Positions 3,851-16,906 of a stretch of DNA of 64,000 bases are shown here, piece by piece; the stretch's first letter is position 1, and every line of letters begins with the position of its first letter. The notes under the pieces were generated by a model. The model was not told the origin of the DNA, made no database searches, and worked only from the letters and a program-made list of their open reading frames with translations. Source of the DNA: Pseudomonas aeruginosa PAO1 (GTDB lineage Bacteria > Pseudomonadota > Gammaproteobacteria > Pseudomonadales > Pseudomonadaceae). The translations under genes were made by a program, and so were the position numbers. The stretch is from assembly GCF_000006765.1 (NCBI RefSeq), contig NC_002516.2. One strand, written 5' to 3'.

Positions 3851-4453
3851 ATGTACAAGGTCTACGGTGATTACCGTTCGGGCAACTGCTACAAGATCAA
3901 GCTGGCCATGTCGCTGCTCGGCATCGACTACCAGTGGGTACCGGTGGACATTCTCAAGGGCGAGACCCAGACCCCGGAGTTCCTGGCGAAGAACCCCAAC
4001 GGCAAGATACCGGTGCTGGAGCTGGAGGACGGCAGTTGCCTGTGGGAGTCCAACGCCATCCTCAACTTCCTCGCCGACGGCAGCGCCCTGTTGCCCAGCG
4101 AACCGCGCCTGCGCACCCAGGTGCTGCAATGGCAATTCTTCGAGCAATACAGCCATGAGCCCTATGTGGCCGTGGCGCGCTTCATCAAGCTCTACCTCGG
4201 CCTCCCGGAAGCCCGCCGCGCCGAGTTCGAAGAGAAGAAGATCGGCGGCTACAAGGCCCTCGACGTCATGGAGAAACAGCTGTCGCGCACGCCATTCCTG
4301 GTCGGCGAACAGTTCTCCATCGCCGATATCACCCTCTACGCCTACACCCATGTCGCCCATGAAGGCGGCTTCGACCTGACGGCCTACCCGGCGATCCGCG
4401 CGTGGATCAAGCGAGTGGGGGAGGTGCCGGGGTATGTGGGGATGCTGGATTGA
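3851..4453 (+). CDS. Glutathione S-transferase family protein
   Basis: 200 aa. SGNCYK N-terminus, NPNGKIPVL, LWESNAIL and SIADITLY motifs. Confidence 0.92.
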   Translation: MYKVYGDYRSGNCYKIKLAMSLLGIDYQWVPVDILKGETQTPEFLAKNPNGKIPVLELEDGSCLWESNAILNFLADGSALLPSEPRLRTQVLQWQFFEQYSHEPYVAVARFIKLYLGLPEARRAEFEEKKIGGYKALDVMEKQLSRTPFLVGEQFSIADITLYAYTHVAHEGGFDLTAYPAIRAWIKRVGEVPGYVGMLD

Positions 4454-4569
4454 GGGGAGCTTCGATCAGCGGTTGGCGAGGCAGTGATTTCTGTCATGAG
4501 CGGGAGTTTCGGGTAGAGCGAAATTTTTATGCATCGGGCTGGATGCGCGTTTTTCCTGATTATTCGTAG

Positions 4570-4965
4570 CTCGCTTTCCTGGCGCTGCTGTTGGTACCCG
4601 GCGCTGCGCTGGTGGCGGGTCAGTTGCTGGCCGTTGAGGTCGATGCCCAGGAGGGCATCGACCGACTGGCCGCGCTAGCCGACCCGACTACTGTCGGGCA
4701 GCTTTCTCGCCAGTAGGCGCACAGCACTGTCGAGCGGGTAAGCGGTGCGCAATTCTCTGTCGTCGCCGTACGCGGCCTACCGCATAAGTTGGTCATCGAG
4801 GGCTTGGCGATAGGCGCTGCGGCGGTCATCGAATCCTGCTTTCCTGACTGCTCGGGTCGCTATCGATTTCCGCCCAGCCGGTGCGGTACGGGCGTGTCCA
4901 GGGTAAACGCAGCGGTGCGTCCCGCCTGCAGTCGGTCACGGCGCAACTTCCTCGCCGGTGGCCAT
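4570..4965 (-). pseudogene. Decayed Rhs (YD-repeat) core fragment
   Basis: One minus-strand frame reads ...KAGFDDRRSAYRQALDDQLMR*AAYGDDRELRTAYPLDSAVRLLARKLPDSSRVG*RGQSVDALLGIDLNGQQLTRHQRSAGYQQQRQES. In-frame stops lie at 4936-4938, 4777-4779 and 4675-4677. It resembles Pseudomonas Rhs core as recalled, not searched. Confidence 0.7.
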
Positions 4966-4993
4966 GGGACCGCCCATCTCGATTAATTTCTCT

Positions 4994-5010
4994 AACAATT
5001 CCCGTGCCAG
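4994..5010 (-). promoter_or_regulatory. Near-consensus sigma54 (RpoN) -24/-12 promoter facing away from tssA2
   Basis: Minus strand reads CTGGCACGGGAATTGTT against consensus YTGGCACGRNNNTTGCW. The only deviation is C to T at -12. Confidence 0.55.
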
Positions 5011-5095
5011 TCTTTTCGTGGCTCTTTTAATCAATCTCATTCAATGGCTTATTGTTATCCATGTCTCATTCTGAAAAGAAATATAACAAGTGAAT

Positions 5096-5218
5096 TGAGC
5101 AAGAAGTTGCGCAGTGCTGTGCAACTTTTTGCGCAGTAGTGTTCAGGCCAGTATTTTCAAGGGCTGTGGACTGTTATTGGGGATGTTTCTTGGTTTTCAT
5201 TGTGCAACTTCTTGCACA
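5096..5218. repeat. Three copies of an 18-bp palindrome TGnGCAA-N4-TTGCnCA (5096-5113, 5118-5135, 5201-5218)
   Basis: TGAGCAAGAAGTTGCGCA, TGTGCAACTTTTTGCGCA and TGTGCAACTTCTTGCACA. Copy 1 (reverse-complemented) and copy 2 each match copy 3 at 16/18. Confidence 0.8.
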
Positions 5219-5322
5219 ATCGCTATTACGCTCTAAATCAGCTGTTGGTCCGCTTGGAAGGCCTATGTTTCGAGGCTCTCCGGAGAAATCCATACTGCCT
5301 GCCTTATTTTTTATAAATTGTT

Positions 5323-5342
5323 AACTACCTGTTTTGGTAGGG
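5323..5342 (+). promoter_or_regulatory. las/rhl box upstream of H2-T6SS
   Basis: AACTACCTGTTTTGGTAGGG fits NNCT-N12-AGNN and resembles the lasB operator. H2-T6SS is known to be quorum-sensing activated. Confidence 0.7.
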
Positions 5343-5436
5343 TTTTCCAAATGGCCATCAATGTCGTTATGATGGCTATAGCCAAGCCGTAAAGGGCATG
5401 GACGCAGACGCCTGACGTTTGGCTGAAAATCTTTCA

Positions 5437-5450
5437 TTGATTCGTATCAA
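5437..5450. promoter_or_regulatory. Anr/Dnr (FNR-type) box
   Basis: TTGAT-TCGT-ATCAA is a perfect consensus, extended by TTCA/TGAA flanks (5433-5454). Confidence 0.75.
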
Positions 5451-5625
5451 TGAATAGGAAAATTCCCAAAGAGGGAATGTCCTGTTGCTTGCCAGTTTTT
5501 ATGTTGTTTTCATGGAAAAGGCAAAGAGCTCTTCAGACTATTGGGATTTTCGTTCGGTTTTTATGCCAACTAGTTGAATTGTTAAGATATTCATTGGCGC
5601 ACATGGTGTGCATTGAAGGGTTAGG

Positions 5626-7182
5626 ATGACCTATTCGAGCAAGCTCTCCTCGCATTATCTGGAACTCGCGGAACAGCCGATTTCAAAGGATGTCTTTGCG
5701 GGTGAGGATGTGCGTTTTTCCAGCGAATACGAGGCGCTGGAAAATGAGCTGGGCAAGGCGCTCTCGCTCCATGAGAACGGCCAGACCGACTGGTTGAAAA
5801 TCCTGGAAAACAGCGAAGCGCTGCTTCGTGCCCAATCCAAGGACCTGCGTGTTGCAGCCTGGTTGACCTGGGCCCTCTACCAACGGGAATCCTTTCCCGG
5901 TTTGCTGGCCGGACTGGGATTGCTGGAACGTCTGTGCAGCCGGCATTGGGTCGAGATCCATCCGCTCAAGGCGCGCACTCGCGCCGCGGCCATTGCCTGG
6001 CTGGTGCCCCGGTTGGAGCAGGCGCTGAACGAGAACGTACCGATCAAGGAGCAACTCCCCCTGTTCCGGCGTCTCGCCGAGCACCTGGAAAAACTCGATA
6101 CCGCGCTGACCGCGCAACTGGGCGACGACGCGCCCTTGTTGCTGCCGATCAGCCGACGCCTTTCGGGCATGCTCCAGCGCGCCGCCGACAACCAGCCCGA
6201 ACCTGGCGTGGTCGGCGCCGTGGTGGCCCAGGTCAAGCAGGCGGCCAGCCAGTTGCTGGCGCCGGGTGCGCCCATCGACAACGAGCGCGACGCCCACAAG
6301 GCCATGCGCGCCCAGCAGGAGGCCGCACGCCCCCTGTGCGCCTGGTGGCTGAAGCAGAAAGCCACCGATCTGCGCGCGCTGCGCCTCAACCGGACGATGC
6401 TCTGGCTGCCCATCGAGTCCATGCCCGAGCGCAATGCCGAACAGGTCACCGCGCTAAGGGGAGTGCCGGCGGACAAGCTGAAAAGCTACCAGGAGCGTTT
6501 CGCCCAGGGCCTGTACGCCGATCTCCTGGTGGAGCTGGAGGCGAGCCTGGCACGGGCGCCGTTCTGGTTCGACGGCCAGCGCCTGGTCTGGGAGTGCCTG
6601 CAAGGGCTCAACGCCGAGCAGGCGATGCGGGAAGTCGAAATGCATTTCGCCTTGCTCCTGCAGCGTCTGCCGGGGCTGGTGGAGCTGCGTTTCCACGACG
6701 GCAGCGCATTCGCCGATGCGGCCACCCGTGGCTGGATCAGCGCCCATGTCATGCCCCATCTCCAGAACGACAGTGCGCCGCGCAAGGTCGAGACCGTGGC
6801 CCTGCAGGCCGAATGGGACGTCGCCCTGGACGAGGTCCAGCCGGTGTTGCGCAAGGACGGCCTGAAGGCGGCGGTACAGGTGTTGAAGCAGGGCATGAAG
6901 CGCGCCCACGGCGGGCGAGCCCGGTTCTTCTGGCAACTGAGCCTCGCGCGACTGTGCTTCCTGGCGAAGAAGTACGAGCTGGCCAAGACCCAGCTGGAGA
7001 GCCTCGACCATCAGTTGCACGAATCGGGATTGCACGCCTGGGAGCCCGATCTGGCGCTGGATGTACTGCACCTGCTGCATAGCTGCTGCGAGCTGTTGCC
7101 GCAGAACCACGCCGTGCGAGAACGCAAGGAAGACATTTATCGCAGGCTGTGCCACCTCGATCTCGAGGTGGTGCTCGAATAG
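5626..7182 (+). CDS. tssA2: T6SS TssA (HsiA2), ImpA-N plus VasJ-type C-terminal region
   Basis: 518 aa. GEDVRFSSEYEALE, SKDLRVAAW and PFWFDGQRL motifs. First gene of the H2 cluster. Confidence 0.93.
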   Translation: MTYSSKLSSHYLELAEQPISKDVFAGEDVRFSSEYEALENELGKALSLHENGQTDWLKILENSEALLRAQSKDLRVAAWLTWALYQRESFPGLLAGLGLLERLCSRHWVEIHPLKARTRAAAIAWLVPRLEQALNENVPIKEQLPLFRRLAEHLEKLDTALTAQLGDDAPLLLPISRRLSGMLQRAADNQPEPGVVGAVVAQVKQAASQLLAPGAPIDNERDAHKAMRAQQEAARPLCAWWLKQKATDLRALRLNRTMLWLPIESMPERNAEQVTALRGVPADKLKSYQERFAQGLYADLLVELEASLARAPFWFDGQRLVWECLQGLNAEQAMREVEMHFALLLQRLPGLVELRFHDGSAFADAATRGWISAHVMPHLQNDSAPRKVETVALQAEWDVALDEVQPVLRKDGLKAAVQVLKQGMKRAHGGRARFFWQLSLARLCFLAKKYELAKTQLESLDHQLHESGLHAWEPDLALDVLHLLHSCCELLPQNHAVRERKEDIYRRLCHLDLEVVLE

Positions 7183-15394: not shown

Positions 15395-16906
15395 ATGTTC
15401 AGCCGCGTACCGCAACCCCTGGCCTTCGCCGAAGCCCTGCTCGCTCAGTTCGGCGCGCTGTCGCGGGAAACCGACATCACGGCCCTGCTGGGCGGTTTCG
15501 CACGCGCAGTCGGCGAACTCAGCGGCTGCGAGCTGAGCCAGTTGTATCTGCTCGACCAGACCCATACCGCGCTCACCCTCAACGCCGAATGCCGGGACGG
15601 CCTGTTGCAGGCGCTGGAGCCGTCGAGCCTGCCGGCGGACTACACCGGCGAGCAGTTGCTGCAGTTCGCCCTGTGCCAGAACCGCGTGGTCAGTCTCGTC
15701 GACCTGCCGTCGCGGCTGCACGAGACCGGCTTCCTGCCGGCAGGGGAGCAGCCCTGGCTGTCCCTGCTCTGCGTTCCGCTGGTGAGCCCGGAGAAAACGG
15801 TCGAGGGCATGGTGGTCTGCGCTACCCGGCGGCCATTGGACCTGCAGGGATTCGCCCATCCACTGGGCCAGCTGGGCTCGTTCGTGCTGGCCCAGCTGCA
15901 TCTGCTGCAACGCCTCTCGCAACCCTCCGGCGAGCCGCAGGGACCGTCCAGCGCACCGGTGGTCAGCGGCTACGGGCTGATCGGCAGGAGCGCGGCGATG
16001 CGTGAGACCTGCCGCCTGATCAGCAAGGTCCTGCACAACCCCTATACCGTGTTGCTGCAGGGCGAGACCGGCACCGGCAAGGAGGTGGTCGCACGGGCGA
16101 TCCACGAGTACGGCCCGCGGCGTGCACAGGCGTTCGTGGTGCAGAACTGCGCGGCGTTTCCGGAAAACCTGCTGGAAAGCGAGCTGTTCGGCTACCGCAA
16201 GGGCGCCTTTACCGGTGCCGAGCGCGATCGTCCCGGGTTGTTCGATGCCGCGGATGGCGGAACCCTGCTGCTCGACGAAATCGGCGACATGCCCCTCTCG
16301 CTCCAGGCCAAGCTGTTGCGCGTGTTGCAGGAAGGCGAGATTCGCCCGCTCGGCGGCAACGATACGCACAAGGTCGATGTACGCATCATCGCCGCTACCC
16401 ACCGTGACCTCGCCCTGCTGGTACGCGATGGCAAGTTCCGCGAAGACCTCTACTACCGGCTGGCGCAGTTTCCCATCGAGTTGCCGCCGTTGCGCCAGCG
16501 CGAGGGCGACGCCCTCGAACTGGCCCGGCATTTCGCCGAGCGCGCCTGCGTGTTCCTGCGCCGCGCGCCGCTGGGCTGGTCCGCGGAAGCGCTGGAACTG
16601 CTCGACGGCTATGGCTTTCCCGGCAACGTTCGGGAGCTGAAGGGATTGGTGGAATGCGCGGTACTGCTCTGCGAAGGCGAGATGCTGCTGGCCGAACACT
16701 TTTCCCTGCGCGCGCCCCCGGAAGCGGAGGCGCCGCTCAAGCTGCGCGAGCATCTGGAGCAGATCGAACGGGACCTGCTGCTCGCCTGCCTGCGCAGGAA
16801 CGCTGGCAACCAGACCCTCGCCGCGCGCGAACTGGGTCTGCCGCGACGAACCCTGATCTATCGCATGGGACGCCTGAACATTCATTTCGGCGATCCCCGG
16901 ACCTGA
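15395..16906 (+). CDS. sfa2: Sigma54-dependent enhancer-binding activator Sfa2 (GAF-like, AAA+, HTH)
   Basis: ATG 15395, 503 aa. GETGTGKE, ESELFGYRKGAFTGA and C-terminal NQTLAARELG HTH. Confidence 0.94.
   Translation: MFSRVPQPLAFAEALLAQFGALSRETDITALLGGFARAVGELSGCELSQLYLLDQTHTALTLNAECRDGLLQALEPSSLPADYTGEQLLQFALCQNRVVSLVDLPSRLHETGFLPAGEQPWLSLLCVPLVSPEKTVEGMVVCATRRPLDLQGFAHPLGQLGSFVLAQLHLLQRLSQPSGEPQGPSSAPVVSGYGLIGRSAAMRETCRLISKVLHNPYTVLLQGETGTGKEVVARAIHEYGPRRAQAFVVQNCAAFPENLLESELFGYRKGAFTGAERDRPGLFDAADGGTLLLDEIGDMPLSLQAKLLRVLQEGEIRPLGGNDTHKVDVRIIAATHRDLALLVRDGKFREDLYYRLAQFPIELPPLRQREGDALELARHFAERACVFLRRAPLGWSAEALELLDGYGFPGNVRELKGLVECAVLLCEGEMLLAEHFSLRAPPEAEAPLKLREHLEQIERDLLLACLRRNAGNQTLAARELGLPRRTLIYRMGRLNIHFGDPRT

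What the first reader, a model, noticed from the sequence alone, without database searches (positions are those of the whole stretch)
5096..5218. Three 18-bp palindromes: candidate Sfa2 enhancer (UAS) sites
Seen: TGAGCAAGAAGTTGCGCA, TGTGCAACTTTTTGCGCA and TGTGCAACTTCTTGCACA, with consensus TGnGCAA-N4-TTGCnCA. The first two are 22 bp apart (about two helical turns). Their centres lie about 120, 145 and 225 bp upstream of the predicted sigma54 start. Knowledge: this is the usual geometry of tandem enhancer-binding-protein sites, and the cluster encodes such a protein (Sfa2). Inference: this defines the Sfa2 operator, which could be used to find the whole Sfa2 regulon. A related half-site pair GCACA-TGG-TGTGC lies just before the tssA2 RBS (about 5600-5612).
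Basis: partly seen in the sequence, partly recalled or inferred. Interest (0 to 1): 0.7.

Follow-up and report, generated by a model that had tools for sequence, protein, structure and literature searches.

The report
Conserved enhancer triad of hcp2 promoter
The three palindromes are real and belong to a promoter layout conserved across Pseudomonas: they sit upstream of the sigma-54 promoters of hcp2-type type VI secretion genes and are most likely where the activator Sfa2 binds, though in this strain the hcp2 gene they served has been deleted.

Summary
Three 18-bp dyads lie at 5096-5113, 5118-5135 and 5201-5218. They are the only matches in 64 kb (0.25 expected by chance).

The window is a PAO1-type Pseudomonas aeruginosa H2-T6SS locus. 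In PA14-type strains the same, identical dyads lie between divergent hcp2 and tssA2.

The dyads belong to the hcp side. A sigma-54 box on the minus strand (4994-5009) puts their centres about 121, 143 and 226 bp upstream of its predicted start.

The same layout (spacing 83 and 22 bp, fixed distance to the sigma-54 box) recurs upstream of hcp2-type genes. Of 75 such loci from many Pseudomonas species, 49 have three sites and 14 have two. P. aeruginosa hcpA and hcpB, both Sfa2-dependent, also carry it.

An unbiased 18-mer scan of metagenomes again recovered hcp, vgrG and tssA neighbours.

Best reading: this is the upstream activating sequence for the cluster-encoded enhancer-binding protein Sfa2, with three dimer sites on one helical face. 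Binding itself is inferred, not shown.

In this strain hcp2-vgrG14-rhs is deleted, so the enhancer and promoter are orphaned. I found no sigma-54 box facing tssA2.

The extra "half-site pair" at about 5600 is not supported. This is a known kind of element, partly anticipated by Allsopp et al. 2021.

The parts
5096..5113 (.). Dyad site 1, the site nearest the minus-strand sigma-54 promoter (centre about -121 from its predicted start). Sequence TGAGCAAGAAGTTGCGCA.
   Evidence: Identical in PA14-type strains. Corresponds to the proximal site of the conserved hcp-promoter triad.
5118..5135 (.). Dyad site 2, the middle site (centre about -143), 22 bp from site 1. Together with site 1 it forms four 7-bp half-sites at an 11-bp period in alternating orientation.
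   Evidence: inverted repeat I2. Conserved position.
5201..5218 (.). Dyad site 3, the distal site (centre about -226), 83 bp from site 2. A perfect 8+4+8 palindrome if the flanking T and A are included (5200-5219).
   Evidence: Conserved position.
4994..5009 (-). Sigma-54 type -24/-12 box (TGGCACGGGAATTGTT read on the minus strand). It is the hcp2 promoter, orphaned in this strain, with a predicted start near 4983 reading leftwards.
   Evidence: aligned with the box 80 bp upstream of hcp2 in L005/L007. The same box type sits at -87 to -78 from the hcp ATG in 73 of 75 loci. RpoN ChIP peaks at these promoters are reported in PMC8855297.
5026..5035 (.). A/T-rich block containing ATCAA (plus strand) between the dyads and the sigma-54 box. 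A weak candidate for a DNA-bending (IHF-type) site.
   Evidence: Moderately conserved in 77 loci. A full IHF-type pattern sits at the same offset in only 15 of 79 sequences, and the core pentamer in about 26. Low confidence.
15395..16906 (+). sfa2, encoding the cluster's enhancer-binding protein: a weak GAF match, a sigma-54 interaction AAA+ domain and a Fis-type HTH. It is the proposed binder of the three dyads.
   Evidence: Gene calls in identical loci. Recognition helix nearly invariant in 113 orthologues.
5626..7182 (+). tssA2, first gene of the H2-T6SS structural operon. It is divergent from the orphan promoter and is a possible second target of the enhancer; this is unproven.
   Evidence: (ImpA_N + VasJ). 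A sigma-70 start 246 bp upstream of the ATG was mapped in PMC3411052. No plus-strand sigma-54 box was found.
4609..4965 (.). Degenerate rhs-like remnants. They mark the place where hcp2-vgrG14-rhs of PA14-type strains is missing, and they are what the orphan promoter now reads into.
   Evidence: 75-83% identity to two separate parts of the rhs gene of L005..

Best explanation
The three dyads are the upstream activating sequence (enhancer) of the sigma-54-dependent hcp2-family promoter, and the protein that binds them is most likely the H2-T6SS-encoded enhancer-binding protein Sfa2.

Proposed mechanism (inferred):
- One Sfa2 dimer binds each 18-bp dyad through its C-terminal Fis-type helix-turn-helix.
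- The three dyads lie on one face of the helix (22 bp is about 2 turns, 83 bp about 8 turns), so three dimers can assemble into the active AAA+ hexamer.
- DNA looping, perhaps helped by the A/T-rich block near 5030, brings the hexamer to RpoN-holoenzyme held at the -24/-12 box (4994-5009, minus strand).
- ATP hydrolysis opens the promoter.

This module precedes hcp2 in PA14-type strains and also the orphan hcp-vgrG-effector islands, which would tie those islands to the core cluster that encodes Sfa2.

In this PAO1-type window the hcp2-vgrG14-rhs operon has been deleted. The enhancer and its promoter survive as an orphan next to tssA2.

Shown here: the sites, their non-random occurrence, the sigma-54 box, the conserved layout and its association with hcp/vgrG/tssA, and the presence and conservation of sfa2.
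Taken from the literature: Sfa2 and RpoN are required for these operons, and RpoN occupies the promoters.
Inferred: Sfa2 binds these dyads; three dimers template a hexamer; IHF assists.
For: 1. Non-random occurrence: 3 hits against 0.25 expected, with no other hit at 1 mismatch or fewer in 64 kb.

2. Position: the centres lie about 121, 143 and 226 bp upstream of the predicted start of a sigma-54 box. The dyads and box are retained in PA14-type strains, where the box lies 80 bp upstream of hcp2.

3. Conservation:
- In 75 hcp2-family loci from GTDB species representatives, the interval -340 to -140 from the hcp ATG holds 3 sites in 49 loci, 2 in 14, 1 in 8 and none in 4.
- That is 183 sites in 15,000 positions, against 11 in the other 447,041 positions. 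Six of those 11 are the triads of a second hcp gene.
- Site centres cluster at -97, -119 and -201 from the GG of the box.
- In a 79-sequence alignment the three dyads and the sigma-54 box are the most conserved blocks.

4. The layout follows hcp, not tssA. Most loci are orphan hcp-vgrG islands. In the 12 loci with a divergent tssA the distance to tssA varies from about 400 to 785 bp while the distance to hcp stays fixed.

5. It is present at other Sfa2-dependent P. aeruginosa promoters. hcpA has sites with 0 and 2 mismatches, and hcpB with 0, 1 and 2 mismatches, with the sigma-54 box at -73. PMC8855297 reports a small Sfa2 regulon made almost entirely of H2 core and H2-linked hcp/vgrG operons.

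6. Unbiased scan. Among 80 metagenome loci holding the most frequent observed 18-mer, all 21 multi-site loci with enough sequence have an Hcp2-like gene at the canonical distance, and 9 more are cut by contig ends. The exceptions carry vgrG or tssA of H2-type clusters next to the sites.

7. A protein site rather than a hairpin. Changes at the two symmetric variable positions (3 and 16) usually occur on one side only, for example 10, 8 and 6 copies of one-sided variants against 1 two-sided variant.

8. The binder exists and is conserved. Sfa2 carries Sigma54_activat and HTH_8 domains. Orthologues of 69-76% identity occur in the same species, and in two cases on contigs of the same length as the triad-bearing contig (Pseudomonas sp. 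H9, sp. PH1b). The recognition helix is nearly invariant in 113 orthologues while the linker and tail vary, which matches a nearly invariant DNA motif.
Against: - No binding assay exists. The library holds no paper that defines an Sfa2 operator, including a 2026 review.
- The one published Sfa2 ChIP-seq signal was described by its authors as poorly enriched. It lies 2132 bp from the RpoN site, inside tssA2. No sequence between 5219 and 7885 comes within 3 mismatches of the motif. So either that peak is not the high-affinity site or Sfa2 binds something else.
- The -12 element lacks the canonical GC: it reads TTGT here and mostly TTGA in other species.
- In this strain the promoter has no hcp gene to drive.
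- The Sfa2-dependence reported for the tssA2 operon is not explained, because I found no sigma-54 box facing tssA2, either here or conserved in 12 orthologous regions.
- hcpC could not be fetched.
- A conserved Fis-type recognition helix is common to many enhancer-binding proteins, so one search is only weak support.
Confidence: 0.75

Rival explanations
1. The dyads are a conserved operator for a different DNA-binding protein, such as a repressor, an anti-activator or another enhancer-binding protein. Sfa2 would then act from elsewhere (for example the intragenic ChIP site) or from solution.
For: The only published Sfa2 ChIP signal is not at the dyads, and no motif lies under it. Several other regulators are reported for this promoter region: LasR/RhlR, Fur, Anr/Dnr, CueR, PhoB, AmrZ and MvaT.
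Against: The published sites of those regulators that I could place map elsewhere. The las-rhl box is centred near 5333 and the Anr box is at 5437-5450, and their patterns do not match the dyads. In orphan hcp islands the dyads and the sigma-54 box are the only strongly conserved upstream blocks. A sigma-54 promoter needs an activator, and genetics point to Sfa2 alone for these operons. The islands share no neighbouring regulator gene.
Confidence: 0.12
2. The triad is a bidirectional enhancer.
For: PMC8855297 reports that a tssA2 transcriptional fusion and the core H2 genes depend on Sfa2, and these are the only motif copies in the whole cluster. In some other H2-type clusters a pair of the same dyads, spaced 24 bp, lies 40-110 bp upstream of tssA (L115, L151, L168). 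This suggests that the same factor regulates tssA directly in those lineages.
Against: No plus-strand sigma-54 box lies between the triad and tssA2. The best candidates either lack GG or sit 31 bp from the ATG, downstream of any usable leader, and none is conserved in 12 orthologous regions. The mapped tssA2 start in PAO1 belongs to a sigma-70 promoter with a las-rhl box. The distance from triad to tssA varies about two-fold between species.
Confidence: 0.3
3. The dyads are chance palindromes or remnants of a mobile or repeated element, with no regulatory role.
For: The region is A+T-rich relative to the genome (GC 0.48 against about 0.67) and adjoins a deletion scar with rhs remnants.
Against: Shuffles never give 3 hits. 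The sites are identical in strains with and without the deletion. They keep position, spacing and spacer orientation across dozens of species. They are roughly 500-fold enriched in one 200-bp interval.
Confidence: 0.01

Closest known systems
'Repeat and inverted repeat elements' marked in the hcp2/hcpA/hcpB/hcpC promoter alignment of Allsopp et al. 2021 (PMC8855297, Supplementary Figure S9)
   Same: Same organism and same promoters. [quoted passage not shown]
   Different: The sequences are in an image and are not given in the text held. No motif, spacing, distance to the -24/-12 box or cross-species conservation is stated. The authors place the main Sfa2 site 2132 bp away. Whether their marked repeats are exactly these dyads could not be checked.
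Tandem dimer sites of NtrC-class enhancer-binding proteins upstream of sigma-54 promoters (the glnAp2-type enhancer; my own knowledge plus the description in PMC9972734)
   Same: Dyad-symmetric sites roughly 100-150 bp upstream of a -24/-12 promoter, phased on one helical face and read by a C-terminal Fis-type HTH. The closest solved relatives of Sfa2 are ZraR, NifA and NtrC-family proteins.
   Different: The half-site sequence and spacer length differ, and there is a third site 83 bp further upstream. Sfa2 has a GAF-type N-terminus rather than a receiver domain (PMC8855297).
The three-site enhancer of NorR at norVW (my own knowledge; not fetched or tested here)
   Same: Three dyads upstream of a sigma-54 promoter, bound by a GAF-domain enhancer-binding protein. 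Three dimers are thought to template one hexamer.
   Different: Unrelated motif, spacing and signal. The resemblance comes from memory and is a lead, not a test.
VasH-dependent hcp promoters of Vibrio auxiliary T6SS clusters
   Same: An enhancer-binding protein with a GAF domain, encoded in the core T6SS cluster, activates sigma-54 hcp promoters in distant auxiliary clusters.
   Different: The Vibrio promoters are described with a canonical -12 TGC, whereas the Pseudomonas hcp2 family has TTGA/TTGT. I did not fetch or compare the VasH sites.

Membership tests
Enhancer (UAS) of a sigma-54 promoter bound by an enhancer-binding protein | Lies upstream (typically 80-250 bp) of a -24/-12 promoter | tested here: met
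   Box at 4994-5009 on the minus strand. Dyad centres at about -121, -143 and -226. The same offsets recur in 75 loci. The -12 element is non-canonical (TTGT/TTGA).
Enhancer (UAS) of a sigma-54 promoter bound by an enhancer-binding protein | Dyad-symmetric sites, more than one, in helical register | tested here: met
   Three 7+4+7 dyads with spacing of 22 and 83 bp. This spacing is conserved.
Enhancer (UAS) of a sigma-54 promoter bound by an enhancer-binding protein | [quoted passage not shown] | tested here: met
   sfa2 at 15395-16906 carries Sigma54_activat (E 3e-71) and HTH_8 (E 4e-13). Orthologues occur in the species that carry the triad.
Enhancer (UAS) of a sigma-54 promoter bound by an enhancer-binding protein | Sites co-occur with the promoters of the activator's regulon and not elsewhere | tested here: met
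   Found at hcp2, hcpA and hcpB and nowhere else in the 64-kb window. Roughly 500-fold enrichment. The unbiased metagenome scan recovers hcp, vgrG and tssA contexts. hcpC was not obtained.
Enhancer (UAS) of a sigma-54 promoter bound by an enhancer-binding protein | Direct binding by the activator, and loss of activation without the sites | not testable with these tools
   No binding data are held. The published Sfa2 ChIP signal is weak and lies elsewhere.
Anr/Dnr (FNR-type) box | Pattern TTGAT-N4-ATCAA, as printed in PMC9769707 | tested here: not met
   The dyads do not fit it. The published hsiA2 Anr box maps to 5437-5450.
Las-Rhl box | A roughly 20-bp dyad centred 40-60 bp upstream of a sigma-70 start (PMC3411052) | tested here: not met
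   The mapped start is 246 bp upstream of the ATG (about 5380) and the box is centred at -47 (about 5333; CT-N12-AG at 5325-5340). The dyads lie 170-275 bp upstream of that start.
Fur box | The 19-bp A/T-rich pattern printed in PMC3411052, overlapping a -10 element | tested here: not met
   The dyads are G+C-rich in their half-sites and bear no resemblance to it.
Terminal inverted repeats, REP-type repeats or transcribed hairpins | Dispersed copies, or compensatory changes that keep base-pairing | tested here: not met
   Copies occur only at hcp/tssA/vgrG upstream regions. Variation at the symmetric positions is mostly one-sided.

The most novel reading that the evidence does not exclude
The triad is a hexamer-templating enhancer: three dimer sites supply six protomers, held in fixed helical register across the genus. 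In PAO1-type strains it has outlived its own operon. It now works either as a bidirectional enhancer for the divergent tssA2 operon or as a decoy that titrates Sfa2 away from the hcpA/B/C islands, while its orphan sigma-54 promoter fires antisense towards the glutathione S-transferase gene. The 24-bp-spaced pairs right next to tssA in other H2-type clusters would be a second, previously undescribed arrangement of the same operator.
Probability: 0.25. Interest if true: 0.6.

Novelty: new member of a known kind. Interest (0 to 1): 0.45.

Why it matters
Sfa2 and RpoN are known to switch on the H2-T6SS and its scattered hcp-vgrG-effector islands, but no operator sequence for Sfa2 appears in the literature I could search, up to a 2026 review.

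A defined 18-bp dyad with a fixed three-site layout has three uses:
- It gives a sequence-level handle for predicting the Sfa2 regulon in any Pseudomonas genome, including new effector islands.
- It explains how distant islands are tied to the core cluster.
- It shows that PAO1-type strains carry an orphaned enhancer and promoter where PA14-type strains have hcp2-vgrG14-rhs.

It is a routine kind of element (an activator UAS), so the gain is annotation and testability rather than a new principle.

Tried and rejected
1. A sigma-54 promoter facing tssA2. A weighted scan of 4400-5700 and of 12 orthologous tssA-hcp intergenic regions found none that is plausible or conserved. The plus-strand candidate at 5191-5206 overlaps site 3 and is not conserved. 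The candidate at 5595-5610 would start transcription after the ribosome-binding site.

2. The 5599-5611 repeat as a related Sfa2 half-site pair. It has the wrong half-site length and spacer, more than 3 mismatches, and weak, patchy conservation. Orthologous leaders carry different small repeats at that place. As RNA it folds into a small hairpin, but the z-score is only -1.45. It is left unassigned.

3. A motif under the published Sfa2 ChIP peak, about 2.1 kb from the RpoN site: none found.

4. An IHF site between the dyads and the promoter: only weak, partial support.

5. Literature search for the dyad letters, PA1663 motifs and Sfa2 binding assays: nothing relevant. Bernard et al. 2011 is not held. 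The ChIP peak table of PMC8855297 was cut when stored.

6. Fetching hcpC. The exact Hcp2 protein could not be looked up. Three N-terminally extended Hcp entries led to roughly 2-kb contigs with no usable upstream sequence, apparently broken at the repeated hcp gene; L097 and L098 had no sites and no sigma-54 box, and the hcp start was not located in L096. These were discarded. L011 (P. paraeruginosa) is a further hcp2-type island but not demonstrably hcpC.

Note on method. The sigma-54, Anr and Fur patterns were used as printed in papers read here. The IHF pattern was my shorthand for the one printed. In my private reasoning I also recalled a few short textbook operator patterns of other regulators from memory, as leads.

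Full report
**What is there**

Shuffled sequence gives a mean of 0.25 and never three. The next-best sequences in the window have two or more mismatches.

Sites 1 and 2 together form four 7-bp half-sites at an 11-bp period in alternating orientation. Site 3 lies 83 bp further on. The region is an A+T-rich island (GC 0.48) in a genome of about 67% GC.

**Context**

The window is a Pseudomonas aeruginosa H2-T6SS locus of the PAO1 type:
- A glutathione S-transferase gene ends at 4453.
- tssA2 (ImpA_N + VasJ) starts at 5626.
- tssB2 and tssC2 follow.

Looking up the exact TssA2 protein returned two kinds of locus. Eight places had the same arrangement as the window. Two PA14-type places had hcp2-vgrG14-DUF4123-rhs transcribed divergently from tssA2, with a 697-bp intergenic region.

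Aligned, the two types are collinear from about window position 4990 rightwards, and the three dyads are identical in both. To the left, the window carries only short, diverged rhs-like fragments at 4609-4965. So in this strain the hcp2 operon has been lost and its upstream region retained.

**The promoter the dyads belong to**

A weighted scan with the sigma-54 consensus printed in PMC9993120 finds one good box in the intergenic region. It is on the minus strand at 4994-5009 (TGGCACGGGAATTGTT). In PA14-type loci the aligned box lies 80 bp upstream of the hcp2 ATG.

Its predicted start is near 4983. PMC8855297 reports RpoN ChIP peaks and 'clear RpoN binding sites' at hcp2, hcpA/B/C and the central H2 promoter.

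**Comparative test**

I used Hcp2 from a PA14-type locus to fetch 80 hcp2-type loci from species-representative genomes, almost all Pseudomonas. The same dyad recurs at the same three positions, about 292, 209 and 187 bp before the hcp ATG.

Results for the 75 loci with enough upstream sequence:

| Sites with 1 mismatch or fewer, in -340 to -140 from the hcp ATG | Loci |
|---|---|
| 3 | 49 |
| 2 | 14 |
| 1 | 8 |
| 0 | 4 |

- That interval holds 183 sites in 15,000 positions. The remaining 447,041 positions hold 11, six of which are the triads of a second, tandem hcp gene (L034, L055).
- Site centres cluster at -97, -119 and -201 from the GG of a sigma-54 box, which itself sits 78-87 bp before the ATG in 73 of 75 loci.
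- The most frequent observed site is TGCGCAAGAAGTTGCGCA (72 of 183), followed by its mirror form with the spacer reversed (35).
- Ten of the twelve specified positions are 96-100% constant, and the two symmetric variable positions (3 and 16) 86-87%.
- The 4-bp spacer is GAAG or CTTC in most sites.
- The commonest order is GAAG, GAAG, CTTC from distal to proximal, which is also the order in the window when read in the hcp direction.

In a 79-sequence alignment the dyads and the sigma-54 box are the most conserved upstream blocks.

Most of these loci are orphan hcp-vgrG islands. In the 12 loci with a divergent tssA, the triad keeps its distance to hcp while its distance to tssA ranges from about 400 to 785 bp. 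The triad is therefore an hcp-promoter module.

In P. aeruginosa the module is present at three promoters:

| Promoter | Mismatches per site | Sigma-54 box (from ATG) |
|---|---|---|
| hcp2 | 0, 0, 0 (three perfect sites) | -80 |
| hcpA | 0 and 2 | -73 |
| hcpB | 0, 1 and 2 | -73 |

A further island in P. paraeruginosa also has it. hcpC could not be obtained.

PMC8855297 shows that the Sfa2 regulon is small (49 genes) and consists almost entirely of the H2 core cluster and the H2-linked hcp/vgrG operons. This matches the distribution of the motif.

**Unbiased check**

I scanned metagenome contigs for the most frequent 18-mer alone, which returned 80 loci:
- 21 had several sites and an Hcp2-like gene at the canonical distance.
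- 9 multi-site loci were cut by contig ends.
- 43 single hits in contigs of all G+C contents look like chance matches.
- The informative exceptions were all T6SS-related. In L106 a vgrG lies directly downstream of the sites. Three H2-type clusters (L115, L151, L168; TssA 51-71% identical to TssA2) have a pair of dyads 24 bp apart, 40-110 bp upstream of tssA.

**The candidate binder**

[quoted passage not shown] Its closest solved relatives are ZraR, NifA, NtrC-family proteins and FleQ.

Orthologues of 69-76% identity occur in the species that carry the triad. These include Pseudomonas sp. H9 and sp. PH1b, on contigs of the same length as the triad-bearing contigs. Across 113 orthologues the recognition helix is almost invariant while the preceding linker and the C-terminal tail vary. 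This is consistent with an almost invariant DNA motif, but it is weak evidence on its own.

Variation at the two symmetric variable positions of the dyad is mostly one-sided. That is expected for a protein site and not for a hairpin.

**What does not fit**

- The authors of PMC8855297 obtained only a poorly enriched Sfa2 ChIP signal, 2132 bp from the RpoN site and inside tssA2. I find nothing motif-like between 5219 and 7885.
- The -12 element of the whole promoter family lacks the canonical GC.
- The reported Sfa2-dependence of the tssA2 operon remains unexplained. I found no sigma-54 box facing tssA2, here or conserved in 12 orthologous regions. The start mapped in PAO1 belongs to a sigma-70 promoter with a las-rhl box (the box fits 5325-5340).
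- The inverted repeat at 5599-5611 is not a copy of the motif, is poorly conserved, and is not a significantly stable RNA hairpin.

**Verdict**

The identity of the binding protein remains an inference.

The element is a standard kind, an activator UAS for a sigma-54 promoter. It was partly anticipated by a supplementary figure of PMC8855297, which marks 'repeat and inverted repeat elements' as possible Sfa2 sites.

What this work adds:
- the explicit motif;
- the three-site geometry and its fixed register to the promoter;
- its genus-wide conservation;
- the recognition that in PAO1-type strains the module is orphaned by deletion of hcp2-vgrG14-rhs.

Noticed in passing
window 4454-4990: PAO1-type strains lack hcp2-vgrG14-DUF4123-rhs, which lies between the GST gene and tssA2 in PA14-type strains. 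What remains is 75-83% identical fragments of two separate parts of an rhs gene (4609-4701, 4672-4850 and 4863-4965). The orphan sigma-54 promoter points into them, antisense to the GST gene.
   Followed up: partly
window 4994-5009 and L011-L095 (about 80 bp upstream of hcp): The hcp2-family sigma-54 boxes have a near-perfect -24 element, but the -12 element reads TTGA or TTGT instead of the canonical TTGC in essentially all 75 loci. This is a family-wide departure from the consensus.
   Followed up: partly
L093 165-178, L094 62-75: The 14-mer reported as a Dnr-type motif in the hcp2 promoter (PMC9769707) lies on the opposite strand, directly over the -24 element of the hcp sigma-54 box.
   Followed up: partly
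L115 172-278; L151 1485-1526; L168 7638-7679: In three metagenomic H2-type clusters, a pair of the same dyads spaced 24 bp (not 22) lies only 40-110 bp upstream of tssA, with no hcp nearby. L151 and L168 also share a sigma-54 -24-like remnant about 200 bp further upstream. This may be a second arrangement of the same operator.
   Followed up: partly
L106 3634-3734: Two dyads 83 bp apart lie about 210-300 bp upstream of a 690-aa VgrG gene with no hcp in between.
   Followed up: no
L034 and L055, 1714-1836 and 2707-2832: Pseudomonas brassicacearum has two tandem hcp genes (69-73% and 93% identical to Hcp2), each with its own complete triad.
   Followed up: no
window 5457-5467, 5485-5493 and 5158-5167: Other blocks are conserved among the 12 tssA-hcp intergenic regions: GGAAAATTCCC and TTGCTTGCC upstream of tssA2, and CAAGGGCTGT between dyads 2 and 3. 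None is assigned to a factor.
   Followed up: no
L045, L047, L048, L052, L053, L060: Species of the P. corrugata/mediterranea group keep only the proximal site, with a G+C-rich spacer. L046, L071 and L090 have no site within 1 mismatch, and neither does L075 in the 2345-bp contig held. This is possible lineage-specific rewiring.
   Followed up: no
window 5599-5611: A small 5+3+5 inverted repeat sits just before the tssA2 ribosome-binding site. Orthologous leaders have different small repeats at the same place. It may be an RNA-level feature of the RsmA-controlled leader, but the fold is not significant.
   Followed up: partly
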